Under the pieces are notes generated by a model. It ran no database searches, was not told the DNA's origin, and worked only from the letters and a program-made list of their open reading frames with translations. From Schizochytrium sp. TIO01 (lineage: Eukaryota; Protista; Bigyra: Labyrinthulomycetes), in the NCBI GenBank assembly GCA_004764695.1, contig SMSO01000034.1, positions 1,054,001 to 1,118,000 of the forward strand: a stretch of DNA of 64,000 nucleotides. Reading direction: 5' to 3'. Position numbers and translations under genes: made by a program. Below, in pieces: positions 1 through 63,613 of this stretch; position 1 is the first letter of the stretch; each line of letters starts with the position of its first letter.

Positions 1-1226
1 CACAATTACTTGACTTTATGTTGGTTGCACTTATATAGTGCAGTTGGAAATTCAACACCGGCTAGCTGAGGCAACCAAAGAGCCTCAAATTTCGATTACA
101 GTGTGTGACCATGAATCATTAAGGTAATTTCAATAACTAAATAAGAAGCACCGAATAGTGACTTGGTTCGCAAAGCCTTGATCGTATTCTATCCTACCTA
201 CCTAGGTTGAATCTATTGTCATACTTCAAGACTAAACACGGGTCTATTGTTATCTAGTGTTGAAAGTTGGGTTTTCTTCATTTGACTCAAGACGAGAATG
301 AATTGAAACAAAGAAGTTGAGTTCGTCTTGAGAGACCGATTCTAATTTACTTGGTCCGCGGTCTTTACAAGGTGTATCTATTTCTGTTTCCTCGGCCTGT
401 CCAACCTAGTATACCAATCTTACATCAGTCGAAAGGAGTATTATATTTAGTCCCGCACTTCGAGTTAGACTTCAATTTGGATTCACTCATTCTCAAAAGG
501 CAGGATTGACATTTTGAAATTTACATCTAACAAACGAGTTGACCTATTCTATTTGCTCCAGAGGTTGCAATATGCTTGCATAAATCTATGCAGAAACTGC
601 AACCCGTATAAAACTAGCTCGATCTTTTGCAACTTCTTATCGATTGTGATTTACAAAAACTCTTGCCCATATTAGTCTTTAAGCAACCCTTTCAATTCTT
701 TCCACACTAATTGGAGATGTGAGGCTAAGGAGACTGAATACGAATAACCTTTGTATTGCACTATGCTAATTCTCTTTTGCGTGTGAAGACAAGGGATCAT
801 CACACTACGTAGATAACCTCTACCTACCGGACTATACAGCTATTACTATCGAAATGTCTCATTGTTTTCTGTGTTCCGCTCTCAAAATCGATACTCAACA
901 AGTAGCTACGTAGCCCATTTAAATTTACTCACGCACTGTTCAAGAACAATGAATGATGACAACACCACTCATCGCCACGAAATAGGTACATCCTGAGAGT
1001 GCTGCTTTTCGTGTCGCACCAACTTGACCGAGCGAAAGCTGCTATGAAACTTTAAAAAGAGAGAATAAGCACCATATGAATGGGAACTAGTGCCTATCCA
1101 GACAGTAAGGGTTTATAGTGAAAAACGAATGAAGGCGATGGGAAAATTTTTTCAAGAAAGCTCCTGACGCCAGAGAAAATCGTTGCTTCATTCTGCTTCT
1201 TCGACGCTCACCGCAGCGCGGAGACG

Positions 1227-3920: not shown

Positions 3921-4475
3921 TTAGTGGGCTTTGAAGTCCACCACTTCTGCACCCAATAACTCCAAAGCTTTTGTGCTGAAGTGCCCGAAGTCAAGACATT
4001 TTGGCCCTTTTACGTGCCAATAGTGCCAACATATCCCTGCACTCGCATCGCAATGACACCTGAGTTGGATTACTATTCTATCGATAGGAGTGCGAGCCAT
4101 AGCATGTCGAAGCCTCCTTTGTAGATAAACACCGTGACCTTTAAGAGTAATGAGATTCATGGCTTCGTCATCATCGCGGAAATAGATTGCGCACACTTTC
4201 TTAGCGCTTTCAACATTGGCGACGTCAACTCCAAGTTTTTGTACATTTAGCCAAGAAAAGGGAACCGAAACGGCATCGCCACCACCGAGTCAGCAAGGAA
4301 ACCCAGCCCTGTCAGCAGTTTGCAGGCCAACTCTTTCATGAACTAAGATCCCTCTGCAATGCGGAGTGCCACGGTCGTGAACAACACGCACGAGTTCATC
4401 ATTTACAAAGCAAAAGCCCGGCCAGGCTGTCCAGTAGTACCTGCTACTGCCTGTTCTTTCTGCAATATCGCGTCG
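3921..4475 (-). pseudogene. Possible decayed coding relic of unknown family
   Basis: The 91-aa track ORF has no ATG start. Its frame stays open back to 4475 except for one TGA at 4290-4292. Family not recognised. Confidence 0.25.
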
Positions 4476-5360
4476 TCATCGAAAGCAAATTCACGCACAC
4501 TCGATGGTCGAAAAGCTCTCCCGAGCTCGTCTGCGACAGGTCTGCACACACCAGCAGCGCGAGTATTTCAACAGCGTGTCAAAGCACGCTCCACAGGCAG
4601 TAGAGGCATTCATCGTGGTGGCCACGCACCCATCTCTTCTTGCGTGGCATACACCATATTAACATTACAGTGCCGGATTTAAAGGAGAATTGTTAGTTAG
4701 AAATTTTATGGAAAATCTATTGAAACCACCATAGCAATAATTATATTCATACCATGATCAAATGATCATCAAATGAAACACTTCGATGTCATACTAGGCA
4801 GCAGTCGTGCCCTCTCGCCCCATTGAACTCAAGTGCTTTCATAACATGGTAGAAAGTATGGGGCAACGCAATCATCACTATGGTACCGTGTTCTGCGATC
4901 AATTATTTATGACAGCCAAATGCAAATGTATGACTGACGCCATTTTATATACTTCGTATACATTTTCTTAGCGTTTACGGTAGGAGTGCCCTTTTTACCA
5001 GGAACAGAGCGCCGGTCAATCAAAACTGGCGAATCCTTGGAGCGAGCGAGCCTTTCCGCAGGTTGCTTTCTCTGGGCCTTTCAAGGCTCGATCTTATTCG
5101 TGAAAGTGAAGTCCGCGGAGGAACTTCGGTGCCATTTGCTGGTGTCCAGACTGTCAAGTTAGCCATTGCGAGACACAGGTATCAGTATCTTGTTTGCAAT
5201 GGAACGGTGACAAGCTTTTGTGTACTTTTCTTAGATTCTTTTTATTCCTACGGACATACATACATACATACTTATCTTAAAGCCGTGCTATCTCACTATA
5301 GTTTACTACTATGTGATAGTAGGAGTGGCAGCGCAATCTTTCATTAGAAAGGCGACGAAT

Positions 5361-55011: not shown

Positions 55012-55824
55012 TATTTGGGTTTTGTTTCCGTGCTGGCGCAAAAAAGCCCTGTAAGTTGTTCAAACTCGTATTTTACATTCAAGAATAGTGCTTGAGATCT
55101 TTCCTGTTGCGCAATACTTGGGTCGTAGTAGTTCCCCAGTGGCCTTTCATAGAAAATCTGAGCAAACTCACACGTTCGTCAGAATGTTTGAGCAGGTTTA
55201 GTGTTTTTTTTCTTCTTGAATTACTTTATAAAAAAACAATCTATGTTTGCCAATGCACTTTTTGAGATCATACCCCATGCGCCGTATGATTGTTTGAGAA
55301 AATCAAACCCATGCATTCCATCAACCGGAGCTCCTCGCCTCGTATAATAATAATAATAATAAAGGATTTTTTAGAACTTTGATTATGTTCCTGGCAGCTC
55401 CATTTGCAGCAGCCCGCCTTACCAAACTAGCAGCATAGAACTCAAGTTTTGAATGCATATTACTTCCAACCTATGAAGCGGGTTTTCCCGCGTCATACAT
55501 TGTAGGGTATCTTCTACTCATGGACTTGAGAAATATGTTTACCCTTAAAGAAGAAAGAAGGCAATCTCTACTATCTCGGGAGTCAAGGTGTAAGCAACAT
55601 CGCCAAGTCCGACGTACCGCATCAAAGTCCCTTCCACCCTTTCAAAGTATTAAAATGGCCAATTCTATCGAGTCCTATCGTTTATGTTAACTACTATTAT
55701 ATGTCTTCACCCTTGATTCAATGTGGGTGGTGCTCCTGGTAAATTCCTTTGCTCGACAAACAGCAATCCAACAATAGATCAGCAAAGTGCCTGTGCTCTC
55801 ATAAACGCAGCTTTGCTTGAAGCC

Positions 55825-56856
55825 ATGGATGCACCGAAGATCGTCCGTGGTGGCGGCAAGCAGTCAAAACGAGCTCAGAAGCGCAGCCGCGCCGAGGCTA
55901 GCAAGGCGGACTCGTCTCATGGCAAACCTGCTCAACATGGACGGTCCTCAGCGGGTCAGAACCCTCGGGGCTCAAAGCGGCCACGTGAAGATGATGAGCG
56001 CAATGAAATCGAGAAAACCCCTGGGAAGGCTGCACCTTCAGAGCAGGCAAGCAAAAAGCCCAAGCAAACTAAGCCCAAAAGTTCCACGACACCGAGCACT
56101 AAGAAACCCGCAATCTCGAGTTTGCAATCGAAGTTCAAAGCTAAACTCGAAGGTGGCCAATTTCGGTGGTTGAATGAGCAACTTTATACAACAACAAGTG
56201 ACAAGGCAATGAAACTCTTCAAACAGAAACCTGAGCTCTACAATGTGTACCACCGTGGATTTGAGAGCCAGGTACAACGCTGGCCTGAAAACCCGGCCGA
56301 GATGATTGCCGCAGAGGTGAAGAAAATGCCCAAGGGTACTGTGGTAGGCGACTTTGGCTGCGGAAACGCACTTATCGCACGTACTGTTCCCCACAAAGTA
56401 TATTCATTTGACCTTTGCAAAACGAACAAACACGTCACGGTGGCTAGCAGCGCTGATGTTCCCCTTGAGGATAGCTGCCTTGACGTGGCTGTGTTTTCCC
56501 TCTCGCTTATGGGAACTGATTACCAGCGATTTTTACTTGAGGCTCGCCGTACACTCAAGGTTGGAGGCCAGCTTATTGTAGCAGAGGTCAAAAGCCGCTA
56601 CAGTTCAGGTTCGGCGAAAGGCGATGCCGAGGAGGAGATGGATCGTGGTATTGCATCCTTCAAGCGTGTACTCAAGAAACTCGGTTTCCGTCTTGAGGAC
56701 GAGGAGCTTGAAAACCGCATGTTTGTAATGTTTCACTTTCGGAAACTCAGCTTACCTGAAGAGCAGGAGACTAAATTGGGCAAACTAATTCGCGCGCAAG
56801 GTTTTATTGATAAAGATGAGGGCGTGTTAAAGTCTTGTATGTACAAGAAGCGTTAA
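55825..56856 (+). CDS. RRP8: Ribosomal RNA-processing protein 8 (25S/28S rRNA m1A methyltransferase, nucleomethylin)
   Basis: KLEGGQFRWLNEQLYTT, YHRGFESQVQRWPENP, SAM motif GDFGCG, VAVFSLSLMGT, AEVKSR, C-terminal LKSCMYKKR. First ATG at 55825. Confidence 0.95.
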   Translation: MDAPKIVRGGGKQSKRAQKRSRAEASKADSSHGKPAQHGRSSAGQNPRGSKRPREDDERNEIEKTPGKAAPSEQASKKPKQTKPKSSTTPSTKKPAISSLQSKFKAKLEGGQFRWLNEQLYTTTSDKAMKLFKQKPELYNVYHRGFESQVQRWPENPAEMIAAEVKKMPKGTVVGDFGCGNALIARTVPHKVYSFDLCKTNKHVTVASSADVPLEDSCLDVAVFSLSLMGTDYQRFLLEARRTLKVGGQLIVAEVKSRYSSGSAKGDAEEEMDRGIASFKRVLKKLGFRLEDEELENRMFVMFHFRKLSLPEEQETKLGKLIRAQGFIDKDEGVLKSCMYKKR

Positions 56857-57396: not shown

Positions 57397-58170
57397 TTAT
57401 GCAGCCTTGGCTTCGGCCTTCTCCTCAGCCTCCTTCTCCTCGGCAATGATCTTGTCCAAGAGATGCTGAACCTCGTCATCATGCATGACGTGCTGCACAA
57501 GCTTACCGGTTGCCTTATCCATTCTGAGTACAGAGAACTCCATCTTGTCCGCGCTCGGGGTGACAGAGTCCATGGTCTTGTTAAGAACCTTGACAGCGAG
57601 CTCAAGGGCTTCATCAATAGAGCAGTCATCCTTGTACTCCTTCTTCAGGAGTGAGGTGGCAGCCTGATTGTTGGCGCCAATGGCGGTTGCCTTCCAGCCG
57701 CCATAGTTGCCGGACGGGTTAGATTGGTACAACTGGAATCCATAGTGGCGATCCCAGCCAGCATAGAGGAAGGAAACACCAAAGGGGCGCTGGCCACCAA
57801 ACTGGGTGTAGCCCTGCTTCAGATCACAAACCCGCATGATGAGCTGCTCGAGAGGCTGGGGCTCTTGGTACTGCAATTTGTAGTTCTGTGCCACGCGGCG
57901 CAAATAGCTAATGAGAACGTTGGCATCGGAGGTGAGACCAGCAACGGCACAGGCCACGTGGTCATCAATCATGTACAGCTTCTCGCTAGTCTTACTCGGG
58001 GCAAGAAGCTTGCTGGTGGCTTTTTTCTCAGCGGCAATCACAACACCATCACCAGCAAGGAGGCCTACACATGCGCCAGCATTGTCAATGGCTTGCATAG
58101 CGTATTCCACCTGAAACAGACGGCCTTCCGGCGAGAACACCGTGGTGCGCGAATCATATCTGGAGCCCAT
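57397..58170 (-). CDS. PSMA4: 20S proteasome subunit alpha type-4 (alpha3/Pre9)
   Basis: [21 protein letters not shown] alpha signature, [48 protein letters not shown]. Confidence 0.97.
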
Positions 58171-59975
58171 TTTCCCGGATTGAAGAGTGAAAACTACACA
58201 GAGATATCACAATGTCTTGCGATCAGAAATACTCAATCAACGTCGATGTTGAAGAGACGATAGATAGATACTCGCTCAAGAGCGTCGAGTTGTCAACCGC
58301 CCTCGATCTCACACTGACCCACAAGGCCACGGGCTCTAGAGAAAGCAAAAGGAAAAGTTGCGCAGATAGAAGCGTATTCGCAAGACGTCAGTAATCTCGC
58401 TCCGCCGCGAAGATAACCGTCTCGCACCCACGCGATCTTCGCCAAGTCGAACTGCCTTGGCTAAATTGTGCTCGAAGCTTCTCTTGCTTCTCTCCCCTTC
58501 TTTCTCTTAATTGATCTTCTTTATTATTATTATAATAACCCATGCAACTACTATTGTTAGTCGTAGCGGAGTGAATTGGGGTTCACTTGCTTCGTAGAGG
58601 AACAGATCTTGAAAGGAACACCTTAAAATATTATGTGTGCCGTTTTATAAATTAAAATAGAACACCTTAACTTAACTTTGATAATGATAAAGCAATTAAA
58701 ACATAGGAGCAAATGCGAACCAAGATAAAATTGAGGCTACTTATAGGCTGGAGTAGAGATGAATGATGAGTGGGTTTGAGAATTTAAAACCATGCACTAA
58801 TGTTCCAAACGAAATACATGTCATTATGTCAATTGGCCACTGTGTTTGTATGAATGCGCGGGGTATGATGAAATAGAAACTAGACACCTCGGTGCAACAA
58901 AGTTAAAAGCGTGATGATTATTTTAATCATTCATTTAGGACATCCACGAAAAGAAGTATTCAACAAGATCCTCGGCTTTTCCGCGGGGTTCTTAGTTATG
59001 GCATATGTAGTAATTCTAGTTACGTGGCTATGATTGGGCCCATGACGCAACATGGGTCAACTGAAATCATAAAAATGGTTTGATAATATGCTTTTGCAAA
59101 GGTCTACAATGAAAAACAGTTGATCAGGGGGCATGCACAAAATTGCAGATATAAAAATAAAAGCTATAGCGGGAATGTAAATCGGTTTGAATCAAGGCTC
59201 ACTAGTATAACTTACAGCAACAAATCTAACCACTGTTTCAGAAGCTTCCTTTAGACAGTTATAGTAAAATCTTTCATGCTTAAGGTTGCAATCACAATGA
59301 GTCCCATTAACTTCTTTCATCGTTTTAATTTCTATCAAAGTGCTGCGAAACCGGAAACTTTCTTCCTCTTCTTAACAATTCGTCTATGTGAACTTTCCCC
59401 AGCCATAGTGCTCTTTGTTACGAATGTCAAGTATAGTCATACCCTTCCAAGGTATATCTATCGTACAAGACGACTTGAAATAGGTTTAATTTTTAAAATT
59501 ATAAAAAATGAGGTATGCGGTACTCCTGTTCTACTATTACACTGTCGAAAACATTGATTATAGAATGACACAGCAACTCCGAGGTTTGAAGAACCCAATT
59601 TGCATTCTCCTGCAAAAAGCACAGAGTGTGGCCATTCTTACGCGTGGTCGGGTACTGGAATGGTACCTTTTCTTAGACTATTCGCAATTTGCTAGGGAGG
59701 TTAGCAAATGTGGTAGAAACCTACTAGGACTACTAGGTACGTATGGGTTTTGCCAATTTCTTCGTTTATTCTCCCAACTCTTTATCTCTCGCGACGTCGG
59801 GCCCGCGCGAGCGGGTTCCTGGGGTCCCTCCGGCGATCAGGTGGGATTCGATATCAAATTGTTCGTCTTGGCCTCCCTCGCATTTGCAGCAGTCTTCCTA
59901 GATACCTCCTCTCGACTGTGCTTGGAGAGAGTTCGTCAACTCCGAAGAACCCTCCTTGTACGGAGTCCATCGGAG

Positions 59976-60003
59976 CAGCAGCAACAGCAGCAGCAGCAGC
60001 AGC
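59976..60003. repeat. (CAG)n trinucleotide repeat upstream of the E3 gene
   Basis: Read directly from the sequence: about 9 units with one CAA. Confidence 0.85.
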
Positions 60004-60160
60004 TTTATCTTCAACTCACACAGCACATTGGAGCCTTCAGGAACGTGCGGCTGAGATACTAAATAGTTGCTAGATCTACAGATCTCATTTGTCGGTCCCA
60101 GCTACTCTTGAAGGCAGGCAGATATACTGACTGACCTCCTGATTGAAACCTGTGCATAAC

Positions 60161-62029
60161 ATGGGTAACGCTCCCAGCATGAGCCGTGGAACCAGTGATG
60201 TTGCTGCCCAAGCCGCTCAGGCCGCGTCACAGGCGGTACTTGCAGTCCAAGCTGCCGCCGGTCTAGGCGCCATCGCCGCCGCAAGGCCCTCTGCTGTAGG
60301 TCTCTTTCCCCGCGACGCCCAGATCCGAGACGACTGGGTGGTTATCTCTCGAGACTCTCCCGTCAGCGCGAATGTCAACAGTGCAAGCGCCTCCATAAAT
60401 CAGCGTAATAACCAAAGTGTCGACGTTAATAACCTTGGAAGTTCAGGGAGTAAACGCGCGCGGAGTAATGGAGCAGGTGCCGCAATCGGCCTTGGGTCCG
60501 GCGAGATTACTGGCTTAGAATGTGTTCGATTGTCGGCACAAATGGTGAGGGCAGTGAGAGCCGCAAATCTTCGCGGTGAAGACCTTCGGCAAACAATGGA
60601 GAACTTAAACGAGGCGATGGCGCTCTTGACGCAAAAGATGAGTGAGATTGAACATAGGTCGCTGGCGGCAATGAGTGACAGCCAAAGAACGTGCTGTGCG
60701 TGTGACGTGGCGGCCGAAGACACATATGCGGACTTTGTGGAGCTAGCAAACTGTGGGCATTCGATGTGCTTAGACTGCTTCAGGACGCATGTCCTGGCCT
60801 CTGCACCGAGGGCAAGCTGCATAATACCTTCGTGTGCATGCCTGATCGCGGAAAGGGACATTCGAGCAAACTTGCAAGCTGGTGACTTGGACATCTACAT
60901 GTCGGCGAGTCTACATAACATCGGTGACCAGATCTGTCACTGCCCGAATTGTGAAAGTCGTATCGCTCTTGATCGAGATAAAAAGGACACTCGGAACGCT
61001 GCACGTGTACGCTGCGTCTGCAACGCAACGTTCTGTGCTGACTGCGCTGTCTCGCCGTATCACGAGGGCCTCTCTTGCGAGGAGTTCTTGACAACGACGC
61101 CTTGCAGGTTCTGCGAGAACCGCGTCCCTGCACCATCATCTGAAAGCAGTAGCCTAGGAGTCGTTGTTCGCTGTGCATCTCCAAGTTGTGAACAAAAGGC
61201 CCAAGACCTCTGCGGGAAAATTCGTCCTGAGTGCGGCCACGTTTGTGGAGGCTTAGCTGGCGAATCCTCTTGCCCTGAAATGTGTTTCCAGTGCCTTGGT
61301 CCTGATGCCTTGTGTGTTGTCTGCCTTGATCCACTCGAGCAAGGCGCAAGCATTGAGCTTTCTTGTGGCCACCCGATGCACGTTGAATGTATTCGTGAAC
61401 GTTTTGCGAGTGAACGTAGTGCCGAGCGTGCAACTCTAACTTTTGCCAAATGTACAGTATGCAAAGCTGATATGGCTCACCCTGAGGCTCTAGAGGCAGA
61501 GTTTCTCGCTGTTGCAGAACTGCGAGCAAGTGTTGGCAGCGTACTTGAAGAAGCGCGCCAGCGTGCTTCGCCTGCCGAGGCCCTCCTTGAAGATGATGCA
61601 TTCACTTTGTTTTATTGCACACGATGCCGACGCCCATTCTTTGGTGGCATGCGCCAATGTGAGGAAGCAGTAGACGATGCCAACCATGGAGAAGGAGGTC
61701 GGCATTGTTCTTCTTGCACATGTGCCCTGCAGCAGGTGTCCATTTGCCCAGAACATGGACCTGATAGTATGCAGTTCAAATGCTCTTTCTGTTGCACACC
61801 GGCCAGTTTCTTCTGTTGGGGGACCACTCATTTTTGTGTAGACTGCCACGCCCGCCAGATGGCTGGTGAGCGTCTAAACAAGCTATCTATTTCTCAACTA
61901 CCGCAATGCAATAGTGCGGAAGATTGTCCTCTAGGTCTCAATCATCCTCCCAATGGCACCCCCCCATCTATATGCGCTCCTGTGGTTCTTGGTTGCTCCA
62001 TGTGTCAGGCGCGACATGCCCTTATGTAA
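60161..62029 (+). CDS. E3 ubiquitin ligase: RING1-IBR fused to a MYCBP2/Highwire-type RING-Cys-relay (RCR) domain
   Basis: RING1 (CCAC..CGHSMCLDC..CIIPSC) and IBR (CPNC..RCVCNATFCADC..YHEGLSCEEF), then CRFC..C..C..CGHVCGG, RING-H2 CVVC..LSCGHPMHVEC..CTVC, and YCTRCRRPFFGGMRQCE..CPEHG..FKCSFCC..FFCWGTTHFCVDCH..CPLGLNHPPNG..LGCSMC. First ATG 60161 gives MGNAPS. Confidence 0.9.
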   Translation: MGNAPSMSRGTSDVAAQAAQAASQAVLAVQAAAGLGAIAAARPSAVGLFPRDAQIRDDWVVISRDSPVSANVNSASASINQRNNQSVDVNNLGSSGSKRARSNGAGAAIGLGSGEITGLECVRLSAQMVRAVRAANLRGEDLRQTMENLNEAMALLTQKMSEIEHRSLAAMSDSQRTCCACDVAAEDTYADFVELANCGHSMCLDCFRTHVLASAPRASCIIPSCACLIAERDIRANLQAGDLDIYMSASLHNIGDQICHCPNCESRIALDRDKKDTRNAARVRCVCNATFCADCAVSPYHEGLSCEEFLTTTPCRFCENRVPAPSSESSSLGVVVRCASPSCEQKAQDLCGKIRPECGHVCGGLAGESSCPEMCFQCLGPDALCVVCLDPLEQGASIELSCGHPMHVECIRERFASERSAERATLTFAKCTVCKADMAHPEALEAEFLAVAELRASVGSVLEEARQRASPAEALLEDDAFTLFYCTRCRRPFFGGMRQCEEAVDDANHGEGGRHCSSCTCALQQVSICPEHGPDSMQFKCSFCCTPASFFCWGTTHFCVDCHARQMAGERLNKLSISQLPQCNSAEDCPLGLNHPPNGTPPSICAPVVLGCSMCQARHALM

Positions 62030-63019
62030 AAACAATCTTAGTCTACCTCCTACTATCTTGCATCATTGTCAGATGCGATACAACGAGGCTGCAAATCTTA
62101 TAAATCATTTAATTACAACTCTACTGTTCCTGACAGTTTCTACCAGTTAGTGGTTGACCCTTGTAGCTTATTTGCACAGACTGTAGGTGGCGCGGCTTGT
62201 CATCAGTGAGAGTGAGCGGATCAATGCCTCTCAATACTGATGAGACGTTTTATTTCAAACAAATGAAATCAATCTCTGTGATACCAACATATTTAATCAG
62301 ACAATTTTAATGACAGCGAAGAAGAAACAGTTGGATTTTTGAGGTATGATTGATACATTTTATTTAATCAATTATTTCGGTATGGACGCTGTTATGGGGT
62401 GCATCAGGGTTGTACAACGCTCAAAACAATCTGCTGGTTTAACACCAAATCAATGTTAATGCTGAGTGGGGCCATCGCTGAGATAAATTCAACTCTGGGA
62501 GCCTTGGCTCCCGTGGTTGTAGCTGACAATGTTTAGAATATTCTTGGCTCTATGATAGATCCAAAAACTTGATAATACTACAATGATTATAGTTGCAGCT
62601 TCTGACTCAATTTAATCATTGTGTGTGGATATAATTAGATAGTGACTAACTACAATCCTCCGGCGAAACAATTCAATCTACGCCCCTCTTAGATTCTTAA
62701 AAAGTTTCCTTGACCCTGTAACGTTAGGGAGACTGCTCGAGTCACAAAGATGCACGCTATATTGAGAAAGACATAATTTAAAACTAAATGGCAAAAAAGT
62801 TCTCTTTCCTTTTTATTTGAGAATAAACGTAATCGGAGGTCAAGCGCTTGGTGAGCTCCCTGCACCACAGTGCCTCTAAAGGGTTTGATTTAATTGCCGT
62901 GGCGCTCAGGAATCTGATTGTATAGTTGCTGGGTGATGCTGGGTGAATGTTGAATGTGTTTATGTAAAGGTCGCGAGCCCAGGCAGTGGAGGCAAGCAAC
63001 AAGACTCTATGTCATCATC

Positions 63020-63613
63020 TTATTTCTTCACCAGCTGGTACCAGGAAATCTCCGTGACCTTATGAAGTGTGATGACAATAGAGTCCGGCTTGCACTTGTG
63101 CGAAACCTTGCTAATCTCACTATGCAGCTTGGGCAACATGAGTTCGTAGTCCTTGCCGTCATCCATATTTTTCAAGTTGATGGTCAGAGACGTTTCGGAC
63201 CAGTCGAGATCCACATTGTCGTCAGAAGGCTCAGCTCCGGTAAGAAGATCATCCGTCGGCACGTAAACCTTGACAGTCTTCTTGCCATCAGCCCAGCTGT
63301 AGCGCTTAATAACGTTTTTCAGCTTTTTGACAGGTACCTCGTCTACGGCCTGGCTAGGGTCAATACGGGGCGGTTCGCCGCCGTAGTTCTTGACAGTCTC
63401 GCGAGACGAAGCGTGAGCGTAGTAGTAAGCGTTCTGACCCTTGCGGCGGATGTTCTCCTGGAGGGCATTCTTTGCAGGGCTGTCGTCCTCCTCCTCATCT
63501 GCGGCAGAAGAAGTGCCCGCAACAGCGTCATCGCCAGTGTCCTCCACGGAAAGGGACGCGAGGTCCTCGCCCGAGAGCGTGGATTCAGCAGCGTTACTCT
63601 CGACCTCCGACAT
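63020..63613 (-). CDS. CS (p23-like/HSP20-fold) domain protein, CacyBP/SIP-like
   Basis: IKRYSWADGKKTVKVYV...LTINL...YELMLPKLHSEI...KPDSIVITLHK...W CS pattern. Acidic N-terminus and KGQNAYYYAH motif. GC3-biased codons. Confidence 0.85.
   Translation of the reverse strand: MSEVESNAAESTLSGEDLASLSVEDTGDDAVAGTSSAADEEEDDSPAKNALQENIRRKGQNAYYYAHASSRETVKNYGGEPPRIDPSQAVDEVPVKKLKNVIKRYSWADGKKTVKVYVPTDDLLTGAEPSDDNVDLDWSETSLTINLKNMDDGKDYELMLPKLHSEISKVSHKCKPDSIVITLHKVTEISWYQLVKK

What the first reader, a model, noticed from the sequence alone, without database searches (positions are those of the whole stretch)
60161..62029. Compact chimeric E3: RBR front end (RING1-IBR) wired to a complete MYCBP2-type RING-Cys-relay module
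Seen: a RING1 (about 60692-60842) and IBR (about 60934-61088) like those of Parkin/Ariadne RBR ligases, but no RING2/Rcat. Instead the rest aligns motif by motif with the C-terminus of MYCBP2/Highwire/RPM-1. Both relay cysteines are present: FFGGMRQC (codon 61658-61660; human YFGGEARC, C4520) and FFCWGTTHFC (codon 61814-61816; human FFCFGTTHFC, C4572). Established: the RCR mechanism was defined in the ~4600-aa animal MYCBP2, which esterifies Thr hydroxyls, whereas RBRs use RING1 to load E2~Ub and RING2 as the catalytic site. Inference: a 622-aa hybrid of two transthiolation E3 classes with two potential E2-binding RINGs, possibly performing non-lysine ubiquitylation in a protist. Similar IBR+MYCBP2-like models may exist in other protists, but I know of no functional description.
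Basis: partly seen in the sequence, partly recalled or inferred. Interest (0 to 1): 0.85.

Follow-up and report, generated by a model that had tools for sequence, protein, structure and literature searches.

The report
Protist RBR-fronted RING-Cys-relay ubiquitin ligase
This intronless protist gene encodes a 622-residue ubiquitin ligase that joins the front half of a Parkin-type (RBR) enzyme to the two-cysteine relay so far studied only in the giant animal protein MYCBP2, and the same design turns out to be the commonest form of this enzyme class across eukaryotes, not a one-off.

Summary
One open frame (60161-62029, +) encodes 622 aa.

- **C-terminal half:** residues 381-619 match the MYCBP2 RING-Cys-relay (RCR) crystal structures (E 1e-25; model Z 11). 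Both relay cysteines (C500, C552) and the catalytic His (H563) are aligned.
- **Front end:** residues 175-312 are a real RBR-type RING1-IBR. This protein alone scores below Pfam thresholds. A profile of the family hits HOIL-1 and ARIH2 (E about 1e-10), and the AlphaFold model superposes on RNF216, HOIL-1, HOIP, ARIH2 and Parkin RING1-IBR (Z 7-10).
- **No RING2/Rcat:** residues 313-381 form a separate conserved zinc module that MYCBP2 also has. It has no match among solved structures.

It is not an isolated chimera. Of the 151 nearest cluster representatives, 109 carry the full RING1-IBR + zinc module + RCR, from at least six eukaryotic supergroups. Giant MYCBP2-like proteins form one subclade without the RBR front.

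Transcript-like contigs cover the whole gene in one unspliced piece.

One deviation: the acidic residue of the MYCBP2 catalytic triad is Gly here, so threonine esterification cannot be assumed.

I found no paper describing this architecture; databases name it automatically. I rate it a new variant of a known kind, with moderately high interest.

The parts
60161..62029 (+). Complete intronless coding sequence, 622 aa plus stop
   Evidence: in-frame stop upstream at 60140; single copy in the 64-Mb genome.
60017..62133 (+). Extent of transcript-like contigs (2157-2160 nt) that hold the whole ORF in one piece. They show no joints. They are separated by an uncovered gap from the next gene's contig, which starts at 62399 (X1).
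   Evidence: runs X1, X2 and X7, from two studies. The run type 'RNA' is the tool's guess. Contigs cannot show strand or true transcript ends.
60161..60181 (+). N-terminus MGNAPSM, which fits the N-myristoylation pattern G-{EDRKHPFYW}-x2-[STAGCN]-{P}. The Hondaea orthologue (MGAEASR) fits it too.
   Evidence: This is a pattern match only; modification is inferred.
60194..60256 (+). Ala-rich helix (aa 12-32), conserved with Hondaea. It is followed by a disordered stretch (aa 36-116).
   Evidence: pLDDT 61-68 for the helix, below 50 for 36-116.
60512..60679 (+). Two long helices (aa 118-134 and 140-173) that lead into RING1
   Evidence: conserved in P0003, P0004 and P0005.
60692..60835 (+). RING1, C3HC4 type (C178, C181, C198, H200, C203, C206, C220, C225), as in RBR ligases
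   Evidence: Superposes on Parkin 235-327, HOIP 693-793 and RNF144A RING1 (1WIM).
60851..60925 (+). RING1-IBR linker helices (aa 231-237 and 240-255)
   Evidence: Lies inside the two-domain superpositions on RBR structures.
60941..61078 (+). IBR (BRcat-type) zinc domain: C261, C264, C285, C287, C292, C295, H301, C306. Family motif RxRCxxCxxxFCxxCxxxPYHxGxTC.
   Evidence: Pfam IBR_1 E 0.007, below threshold. Family-level IBR matches. Structure. Conservation.
61103..61294 (+). Conserved zinc module 'ZnX' (C315, C318, C338, C343, C351, C358, H360, C362, C371, C375, C378). It is also present directly before the RING of animal MYCBP2. It is not an Rcat.
   Evidence: P0094 residues 4065-4125. No PDB fold match. 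hhalign probability at most 29% against IBR, RING1, RING and TC.
61313..61462 (+). RING-H2 of the RCR module (C385, C388, C402, H404, H407, C410, C431, C434). V387 occupies the usual E2-contact position (Ile in 121 of 151 relatives).
61493..61582 (+). Linker helices between the RING and the tandem-cysteine (TC) domain (aa 445-468 and 471-474)
61601..62020 (+). Tandem-cysteine (TC) domain
61658..61660 (+). Upstream relay cysteine C500 (equivalent to MYCBP2 C4520)
   Evidence: Cys in 147 of 151 relatives.
61697..61699 (+). G513, at the position of the MYCBP2 triad acid (E4534 by my numbering). Relatives have E or D there in 114 of 151.
61814..61816 (+). Downstream relay cysteine C552 (equivalent to MYCBP2 C4572)
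   Evidence: Cys in 149 of 151 relatives.
61847..61849 (+). H563 (equivalent to MYCBP2 H4583 by my numbering), the putative general base
   Evidence: His in 147 of 151 relatives. The Cys-His-Glu triad is stated in PMC9527308.

Best explanation
The gene encodes an active transthiolating E3 ubiquitin ligase of the RING-Cys-relay (RCR) class. It carries an RBR-type RING1-IBR in front of the relay.

**Most likely mechanism**
1. A UBE2D-type E2~ubiquitin docks on the RING-H2 (aa 385-434), as in MYCBP2.
2. Ubiquitin is taken as a thioester by C500 in the mobile loop.
3. It is relayed to C552 in the tandem-cysteine domain.
4. It is discharged next to H563 onto a substrate nucleophile.

The RING1-IBR (aa 178-306) has zinc ligands and an IBR motif conserved about as strongly as the catalytic site. 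I think it serves as the ubiquitin or E2~ubiquitin holding platform that it is in RBR ligases, positioning donor or activating ubiquitin for the relay. I do not think it is a separate catalytic centre, because it has no Rcat cysteine of its own.

The N-terminal myristoylation-type signal here, and C2 or PH domains in relatives, suggest the enzyme works at a membrane.

**Shown here:** the domain identities, the conservation of the catalytic residues, the single unspliced gene and the wide distribution of the family.

**Inferred:** every catalytic step, the E2 site, the role of RING1-IBR, the localisation and the nucleophile. Because the triad acid is Gly513, I do not assume MYCBP2-like threonine selectivity.
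For: **RCR module**
- PDB 5O6C/6T7F match at E 1.2e-25 over 381-619, with both relay Cys and the His aligned.
- Foldseek E 2e-15, and VIA-align Z 11.0 with 217 residues aligned.
- In 151 relatives, C500 is Cys in 147, C552 in 149 and H563 is His in 147. All eight RING-H2 ligands are present in at least 147.

**RING1-IBR**
- The family profile hits HOIL-1 (E 3.5e-10), ARIH2 (7e-10), RNF216 and HOIP across both domains.
- The model superposes 175-312 on RNF216 512-654 (Z 10.4), Parkin 235-378 (Z 7.3) and ARIH2 136-282 (Z 8.2).
- The ligands and the motif RxRC..C...FC..C...PYH.G.TC are conserved in 89-100% of 109 proteins.

**One gene, under constraint**
- One contig of 2157-2160 nt spans the ORF in three runs, without joints.
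- All 6 strain differences inside aa 178-622 are synonymous. All 3 in the disordered N-terminus change the residue.

**E2 docking**
- Residues 170-622 were co-folded with the genome's own UBE2D-like E2 (L002:1489-1929).
- ipSAE was 0.50, against 0.00 for the best of 3 controls. The tool's verdict is 'weak support'.
- That mark was reached by 51 of 78 solved complexes and 2 of 108 mismatched pairs. At 0.60 or under, it was reached by only 5 of those 78 and by all 4 mismatches that passed (of 180).
- The runs agree in 100% of contacts, and partner pLDDT is at least 86. A similar complex is already solved, so the pass may come from memory.

**Membrane theme**
- The myristoylation pattern is present here and in the Hondaea orthologue.
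- A C2 domain is present in 10, and a PH domain in 2, of 42 long relatives.
Against: - Gly513 replaces the acidic triad residue, which is E or D in 114 of 151 relatives. The window's own clade is variable there (H, D, K, N, T). Chemistry or rate may therefore differ from MYCBP2.
- The usual E2-contact position of RING1 is Ala180 here and Lys in Hondaea. It is L, V or I in 63 of 101 relatives. E2 binding by RING1 is therefore doubtful in this clade.
- This protein's own IBR and RING1 score below Pfam thresholds.
- The relative placement of the domains in the model is uncertain (pTM 0.56).
- The complex prediction gave only weak support and no interface, so it does not say which RING takes the E2.
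- There are no biochemical data for any member of the RBR-fronted group.
Confidence: 0.68

Rival explanations
1. RBR-style loading. RING1-IBR is the true E2~ubiquitin receptor, as in Parkin or HOIP. The tandem-cysteine domain stands in for the missing Rcat, so C500 plays the part of the RBR catalytic cysteine. The RING-H2 is then structural, or binds a second E2.
For: - RING1-IBR is retained in 109 of 151 relatives, with ligands and motif conserved like a functional site.
- The best structural matches include E2-Ub transthiolation complexes of RNF216 and HOIL-1.
- L, V or I at the RING1 E2-contact position in most relatives.
- Weak-support docking of a UBE2D-like E2 somewhere on aa 170-622: ipSAE 0.50 against 0.00 for the best control, with the counts given under the best explanation.
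Against: - The RING-H2 keeps the canonical E2-contact residue (V387; Ile in 121 of 151) and all its ligands.
- In MYCBP2 the homologous RING is the E2 site (PMC9527308; PDB 6T7F title).
- Ala180 here and Lys in Hondaea at the RING1 contact position.
- MYCBP2-type giants work without any RING1-IBR.
Confidence: 0.2
2. Altered or lost relay chemistry. Without the triad acid, the labyrinthulomycete clade no longer esterifies hydroxyls. It may act on lysine or another nucleophile, stop at a single-cysteine step, or be a poorly active scaffold.
For: - G513 sits at the acid position, and the clade is variable there.
- By alignment, the third Phe of MYCBP2's hydrophobic pocket (F4586 in my numbering, from memory) has no aromatic counterpart here.
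Against: - Both relay Cys, H563, W553, F558 and the GTTHFC motif are intact.
- Only synonymous strain differences occur in the catalytic half.
- The gene appears in transcript-like contigs.
- E511 lies two residues upstream and could substitute.
Confidence: 0.1
3. Gene-model artefact: two adjacent genes (an RBR fragment and an RCR ligase) read through as one.
For: None found.
Against: - There is no stop or frame change across 60161-62029.
- Single contigs span the whole ORF in three runs.
- The same fused order is seen in 109 proteins from many lineages.
Confidence: 0.02

Closest known systems
MYCBP2 / PAM / Highwire / RPM-1 RCR module (PDB 5O6C, 6T7F)
   Same: - The zinc module, RING-H2, linker helices and tandem-cysteine domain are in the same order.
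- Both relay cysteines and the His are aligned.
- About 27-31% identity in the structure-based alignments, with fold Z 11.
   Different: - 622 aa instead of about 4,600 aa.
- No RCC1-like or PHR domains, nor the other PHR-protein domains.
- An RBR RING1-IBR is added in front.
- Gly at the triad acid position; W553 in place of Phe after the second Cys.
- A myristoylation-type N-terminus.
RBR ligases (HOIL-1/RBCK1, RNF216, ARIH2, HOIP, Parkin)
   Same: - RING1 (C3HC4), the linker helix and the IBR (C6HC) are all present.
- The two domains superpose together at Z 7-10.
- The family profile reaches E 1e-10 to 1e-6.
   Different: No RING2/Rcat and no RBR catalytic cysteine. After the IBR come ZnX and a complete RCR module.
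Hondaea fermentalgiana 'E3 ubiquitin-protein ligase MYCBP2' (P0002, P0003), and the UniRef-named 'RCR-type E3 ubiquitin transferase' of Cavenderia fasciculata (P0073, F4PV64)
   Same: - Same RING1-IBR-ZnX-RCR order.
- 66% and 57% identity for the two Hondaea proteins.
- All three are automatically named and uncharacterised.
   Different: - The Hondaea gene models look truncated or mis-joined: P0002 lacks aa 90-176, and P0003 diverges after aa 482.
- The Cavenderia protein has a 630-aa N-terminal extension.

Membership tests
RCR-type E3 (MYCBP2-type RING-Cys-relay) | RING-H2 with eight zinc ligands, directly upstream of the relay domain | tested here: met
   C385, C388, C402, H404, H407, C410, C431, C434. 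Pfam zf-RING_2 E 3e-05. Aligned to the MYCBP2 RING.
RCR-type E3 (MYCBP2-type RING-Cys-relay) | Upstream relay cysteine in the mediator loop (C4520) | tested here: met
   C500 aligns with chain position 143, which is C4520. Cys in 147 of 151 relatives.
RCR-type E3 (MYCBP2-type RING-Cys-relay) | Downstream catalytic cysteine (C4572) with an adjacent His base | tested here: met
   C552 and H563 are aligned. Conserved in 149 and 147 of 151 relatives.
RCR-type E3 (MYCBP2-type RING-Cys-relay) | Acidic member of the Cys-His-Glu triad | tested here: not met
   The review PMC9527308 states the triad. The aligned position is G513. Relatives have E in 76 and D in 38 of 151. E511 is nearby but not aligned.
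RCR-type E3 (MYCBP2-type RING-Cys-relay) | Tandem-cysteine domain fold | tested here: met
   Foldseek E 2.2e-15. VIA-align Z 11.0, 217 residues aligned, rmsd 6.7 A. The model's pLDDT is mostly above 90 in this region.
RCR-type E3 (MYCBP2-type RING-Cys-relay) | Two-step thioester relay and hydroxyl (Thr) esterification activity | not testable with these tools
   Needs enzymology.
RBR (RING-between-RING) E3 | RING1, C3HC4 type | tested here: met
RBR (RING-between-RING) E3 | IBR / BRcat, C6HC type | tested here: met
   Below threshold for this protein alone (IBR_1 E 0.007). Met at the family-profile and structure level.
RBR (RING-between-RING) E3 | RING2 / Rcat with a catalytic cysteine after the IBR | tested here: not met
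   Residues 313-381 have no Pfam match and no PDB fold match (best Z 2.3; Foldseek E above 3). hhalign probability is at most 29% against the family's own IBR, RING1, RING and TC, while the RING1-versus-RING control gives 94.6%. It is therefore not an RBR in the strict sense.
PHR proteins (orthologues of Pam/Highwire/RPM-1) | Giant protein with RCC1-like, PHR and partner-binding domains upstream of the RCR module | tested here: not met
   622 aa, with no such Pfam domains. In the tree, the giants form a separate clade with 97% local support.

The most novel reading that the evidence does not exclude
The ubiquitin relay of MYCBP2 is not an animal invention. It would be a pan-eukaryotic, possibly LECA-age (last eukaryotic common ancestor) catalytic module whose normal, ancestral partner is an RBR-type RING1-IBR. 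MYCBP2-type giants would then be a derived branch that lost the RBR front.

In the RBR-fronted enzymes, RING1-IBR would load or position ubiquitin for a three-station path: RING1-IBR to C500 to C552. Recurrent membrane anchors (myristoyl, C2, PH) would point to hydroxyl-bearing targets at membranes, perhaps non-protein ones.
Probability: 0.15. Interest if true: 0.85.

Novelty: new variant of a known kind. Interest (0 to 1): 0.62.

Why it matters
The held reviews present RCR ligases through a single example, MYCBP2. One of them describes MYCBP2 as conserved from C. elegans to mammals.

This gene belongs to a large family that no held paper describes: 1,246 cluster representatives at E up to 0.001. 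The family places the same relay in small proteins of stramenopiles, rhizarians, ciliates, amoebozoans, discobids, CRuMs and Rhodelphis, usually behind an RBR RING1-IBR.

That matters in three ways:
- It links two transthiolating E3 classes in one polypeptide.
- It offers a 450-residue, intronless and probably soluble model for studying the relay, in place of a 4,600-residue one.
- Natural variants without the triad acid allow a direct test of what sets hydroxyl versus amine selectivity.

Tried and rejected
- **Word-indexed protein searches** found only the two Hondaea proteins. The exhaustive phmmer search was what revealed the family.
- **Single-sequence searches** of residues 174-380 against PDB sequences, and of pieces against Pfam, gave nothing significant. 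Only the family profile did.
- **ZnX (313-381) as a degenerate Rcat or second IBR.** Its C-x-H-x-C ... C-x3-C-x2-C spacing looked suggestive. I rejected the idea for lack of support, not as disproved. Folded alone (pLDDT 78.5), it has no PDB match and no profile similarity to the family's other zinc domains.
- **IQ-TREE 'quick' tree** did not finish in time. I used a FastTree tree instead. It is unrooted in effect, so the order of gain or loss of the RBR front is not established.
- **Complex prediction** gave weak support and no interface, so it cannot tell which RING binds the E2.
- **Primary RCR papers** (Pao 2018; Mabbitt 2020) are not held. The residue numbers E4534, H4583 and F4573/F4578/F4586 rest on my memory plus the PDB alignment offset. 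The triad itself is cited from PMC9527308.
- **Literature searches** joining RING-Cys-relay or MYCBP2 with IBR, Dictyostelium, protists, 'RCR-type E3' or 'tandem cysteine domain' found no description of this architecture. The library lacks most subscription papers, so absence is not proven.
Full report
**Observation**

Window 60161-62029 (+) is one uninterrupted frame of 622 codons plus a stop. An in-frame stop lies upstream at 60140. The first ATG has a good context, CATAACATGG. Coding G+C is about 0.52-0.56 against 0.36-0.40 in the flanks. The gene is single-copy in its 64-Mb, 37-contig genome.

The nearest named relatives are two proteins of the thraustochytrid Hondaea fermentalgiana, at 66% and 57% identity. 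Both are named 'E3 ubiquitin-protein ligase MYCBP2'. The next nearest is from Mucochytrium quahogii. I therefore infer that the source is a labyrinthulomycete.

**C-terminal half**

A phmmer search of PDB sequences matches residues 381-619 to the MYCBP2 RCR (RING-Cys-relay) crystal constructs 5O6C and 6T7F. The E-value is 1.2e-25, over practically the whole chain.

Counting along that alignment, C500 (GGMRQC) pairs with chain position 143 and C552 (FFCWGTTHFC) with position 195. The structural alignment (model 378..619 against 4383..4638) confirms the offset. H563 pairs with the His after the second cysteine.

An AlphaFold2 model was built on 34 homologues (mean pLDDT 78, above 90 over most of 190-620). 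It finds 5O6C and 6T7F first, by Foldseek (E 2e-15) and by VIA-align (Z 11.0, 217 residues, rmsd 6.7 A).

**Front end**

Alone, the protein gives only sub-threshold Pfam scores: IBR_1 at E 0.007 for residues 258-300, and C3HC4 RING at E 0.03. Family-level evidence is clear.
- A profile of 34 full-length homologues hits RBR (RING-between-RING) structures across RING1 and IBR together. These are HOIL-1 (E 3.5e-10), ARIH2 (7.4e-10), RNF216, HOIP, RNF144A and CUL9.
- Pfam IBR is found in 13 of 34 and 17 of 42 relatives.
- After the two MYCBP2 entries, the next Foldseek hits with E up to 0.001 are all RBR ligases.
- VIA-align superposes model 175-312 on RNF216 512-654 (Z 10.4), HOIL-1 279-424 (Z 9.5), HOIP 697-841 (Z 8.5), ARIH2 136-282 (Z 8.2) and Parkin 235-378 (Z 7.3). 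In each case the match covers RING1 plus IBR.
- In 109 homologues the eight RING1 ligands are conserved in 93-100%, where an aligned residue is present.
- The second half of the IBR, RxRCxxCxxxFCxxCxxxPYHxGxTC, is conserved as strongly as the active site.

**Between IBR and RING**

Residues 313-381 hold about eleven conserved Cys/His. I call this module ZnX. It is not RBR-specific. Giant animal MYCBP2 (P0094, Leptidea, 4,382 aa) matches the query from residue 314 onward. A ZnX profile finds it at 4065-4125, directly before the RING.

Folded alone (pLDDT 78.5), ZnX has no match among 48,161 PDB representatives (best Z 2.3) or by Foldseek (E above 3). Profile-profile comparison with the family's own IBR, RING1, RING and TC (tandem cysteine) domains gives at most 29% probability. 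The RING1-versus-RING control gives 94.6%.

**One gene, and expressed?**

Contigs of three public runs from two studies are 2157-2160 nt long. They lie on 60017-62133 in one piece, without joints. The next gene's contig starts only at 62399 (X1; 62384-62471 in the other runs) and has a different depth.

This pattern is what transcript assemblies give. However, the run type is the tool's guess, and contigs cannot show strand or ends.

Two runs from related strains differ at nine positions in the ORF. All six inside residues 178-622 are synonymous. All three in the disordered N-terminus change the residue.

**Family and distribution**

An exhaustive phmmer search over 1.84 billion cluster representatives gives 1,246 hits at E up to 0.001 and 129 at E up to 1e-30. 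I scored the best 151 with profiles for the three parts:
- 109 have the complete RING1-IBR in front of ZnX + RCR. Their median length is 649 aa.
- 21 have part of it. These are mostly fragments.
- 21 have none. These are fragments plus proteins of 1,200-4,400 aa.

Named members come from many lineages:
- Stramenopiles: Hondaea, Mucochytrium, Platysulcus.
- Rhizaria: Plasmodiophora, Nonionella, and a cercozoan MAG.
- Amoebozoa: Acytostelium and Cavenderia.
- Discoba: Acrasis.
- CRuMs: Diphylleia.
- Rhodelphis.
- Ciliates, from the ESM Atlas search, which is a lead only.

UniRef already calls the Cavenderia proteins 'RCR-type E3 ubiquitin transferase'. One of these, P0126, is a 3,603-aa giant.

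In a FastTree tree of ZnX + RCR (139 rows), all proteins without the RBR front that are at least 1,200 aa long fall in one clade, together with three shorter proteins that lack the front. Local support is 97%. The window protein sits in a six-member clade with 100% support. The tree has no outgroup, so 'MYCBP2 lost the RBR front' is a reading, not a result.

**Catalytic residues**

Across the 151 relatives, C500 is Cys in 147, C552 in 149 and H563 is His in 147. The RING-H2 ligands are present in at least 147. The RING's E2-contact position is Ile/Val/Leu in 140; here it is V387.

One defining feature is missing. A review describes the second site as a Cys-His-Glu triad (PMC9527308). The aligned acid position is E or D in 114 of 151 relatives but Gly513 here. 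It is variable in the window's clade: H, D, K, N, T. The equivalent RING1 contact position is Ala180 here and Lys in Hondaea, against L/V/I in 63 of 101 relatives.

**Mechanism**

By homology, the most likely path is:
1. E2~Ub docks on the RING-H2.
2. Ubiquitin forms a thioester on C500.
3. It is relayed to C552.
4. It is discharged beside H563.

I think RING1-IBR is an auxiliary ubiquitin or E2~ubiquitin binding platform, as in RBRs. It has no catalytic cysteine of its own, and in this clade it has a weak E2-contact residue.

I co-folded residues 170-622 with the genome's own UBE2D-like E2 (L002:1489-1929). The score was 0.50, against 0.00 for the best of three controls. The tool's verdict is 'weak support'. 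The mark was reached by 51 of 78 solved complexes and 2 of 108 mismatched pairs. At 0.60 or under it was reached by only 5 of those 78 and by all 4 mismatches that passed (of 180). The runs agree in 100% of contacts, and partner pLDDT is at least 86. No interface is given, and a similar complex is already solved, so the pass may be from memory. It does not say which RING is used.

**Localisation hint**

The N-terminus MGNAPSM fits the N-myristoylation pattern, and so does the orthologue's MGAEASR. Among 42 relatives with long extensions, 10 have a C2 domain, 2 a PH domain and 3 an N-terminal ubiquitin-like domain. Membrane association is an inference from these observations.

**Comparison and novelty**

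The protein works like an RCR ligase and passes every RCR test I could run except the triad acid. It has two of the three RBR domains but fails the Rcat test, so it is not an RBR in the strict sense. It is not a PHR orthologue.

Searches of the held literature found no paper that describes RCR modules outside animals, or joined to an IBR. [quoted passage not shown] The architecture is visible in databases under automatic names.

I therefore class it as a new variant of a known kind. It is well supported structurally, widespread and functionally unexplored.

The stretch given to read laying was 5,601 letters. No spliced model was needed.

Noticed in passing
window 59968-60016: An imperfect CAG/CAA trinucleotide repeat lies about 145-190 nt upstream of the start codon. 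It falls inside or at the edge of the transcript-like contigs, and the reads tool skipped it as a repeat. One run (X5) also has a separate 685-nt contig on 59320-59967, so something upstream may be transcribed.
   Followed up: no
window 55723-56856 (+), 57397-58170 (-), 63020-63613 (-): The neighbours are ordinary housekeeping genes. They are an Rrp8-type methyltransferase (Methyltransf_8, E 1.5e-68), a proteasome alpha subunit (E 2.5e-57) and a small CS-domain protein (E 1e-4). The CS-domain gene is convergent with the ligase gene. The two contig sets end about 265 nt apart in X1 (62133 and 62399), and run X5 joins them in one contig.
   Followed up: partly
P0029, P0045, P0069 (relatives; P0069 from a Cercozoa MAG): One subclade of the family has the order ubiquitin-like domain, C2, (PH), RING1-IBR, ZnX, RCR. 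P0101 adds C2 and SPRY domains. C2 is the commonest accessory domain, present in 10 of 42 long members.
   Followed up: partly
P0126 (Cavenderia fasciculata, 3,603 aa) and P0129 (3,368 aa): Giant MYCBP2-like RCR proteins without the RBR front exist in a dictyostelid. The same species also has a small RBR-fronted one (P0073). The giant type is therefore not confined to animals.
   Followed up: partly
P0162 (MDP2438426.1): A 787-aa member of this eukaryotic family is deposited as 'MAG: IBR domain-containing protein [archaeon]'. It is most likely a eukaryotic contig binned into an archaeal MAG.
   Followed up: no
G000:C30:4741131-4741499 and G000:C24:2334833-2335294: Only two loci in the genome reach the Pfam IBR threshold. 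Each has two IBR-model matches, as expected for IBR + RING2 of canonical RBR ligases. The window gene itself is not detected by that model.
   Followed up: no
P0002 and P0003 (Hondaea fermentalgiana): The two public Hondaea models look imperfect. P0002 lacks the helical region equivalent to aa 90-176. P0003 loses similarity after aa 482, so it has no tandem-cysteine domain. The cause could be a frameshift, a mis-modelled intron or a pseudogene.
   Followed up: no
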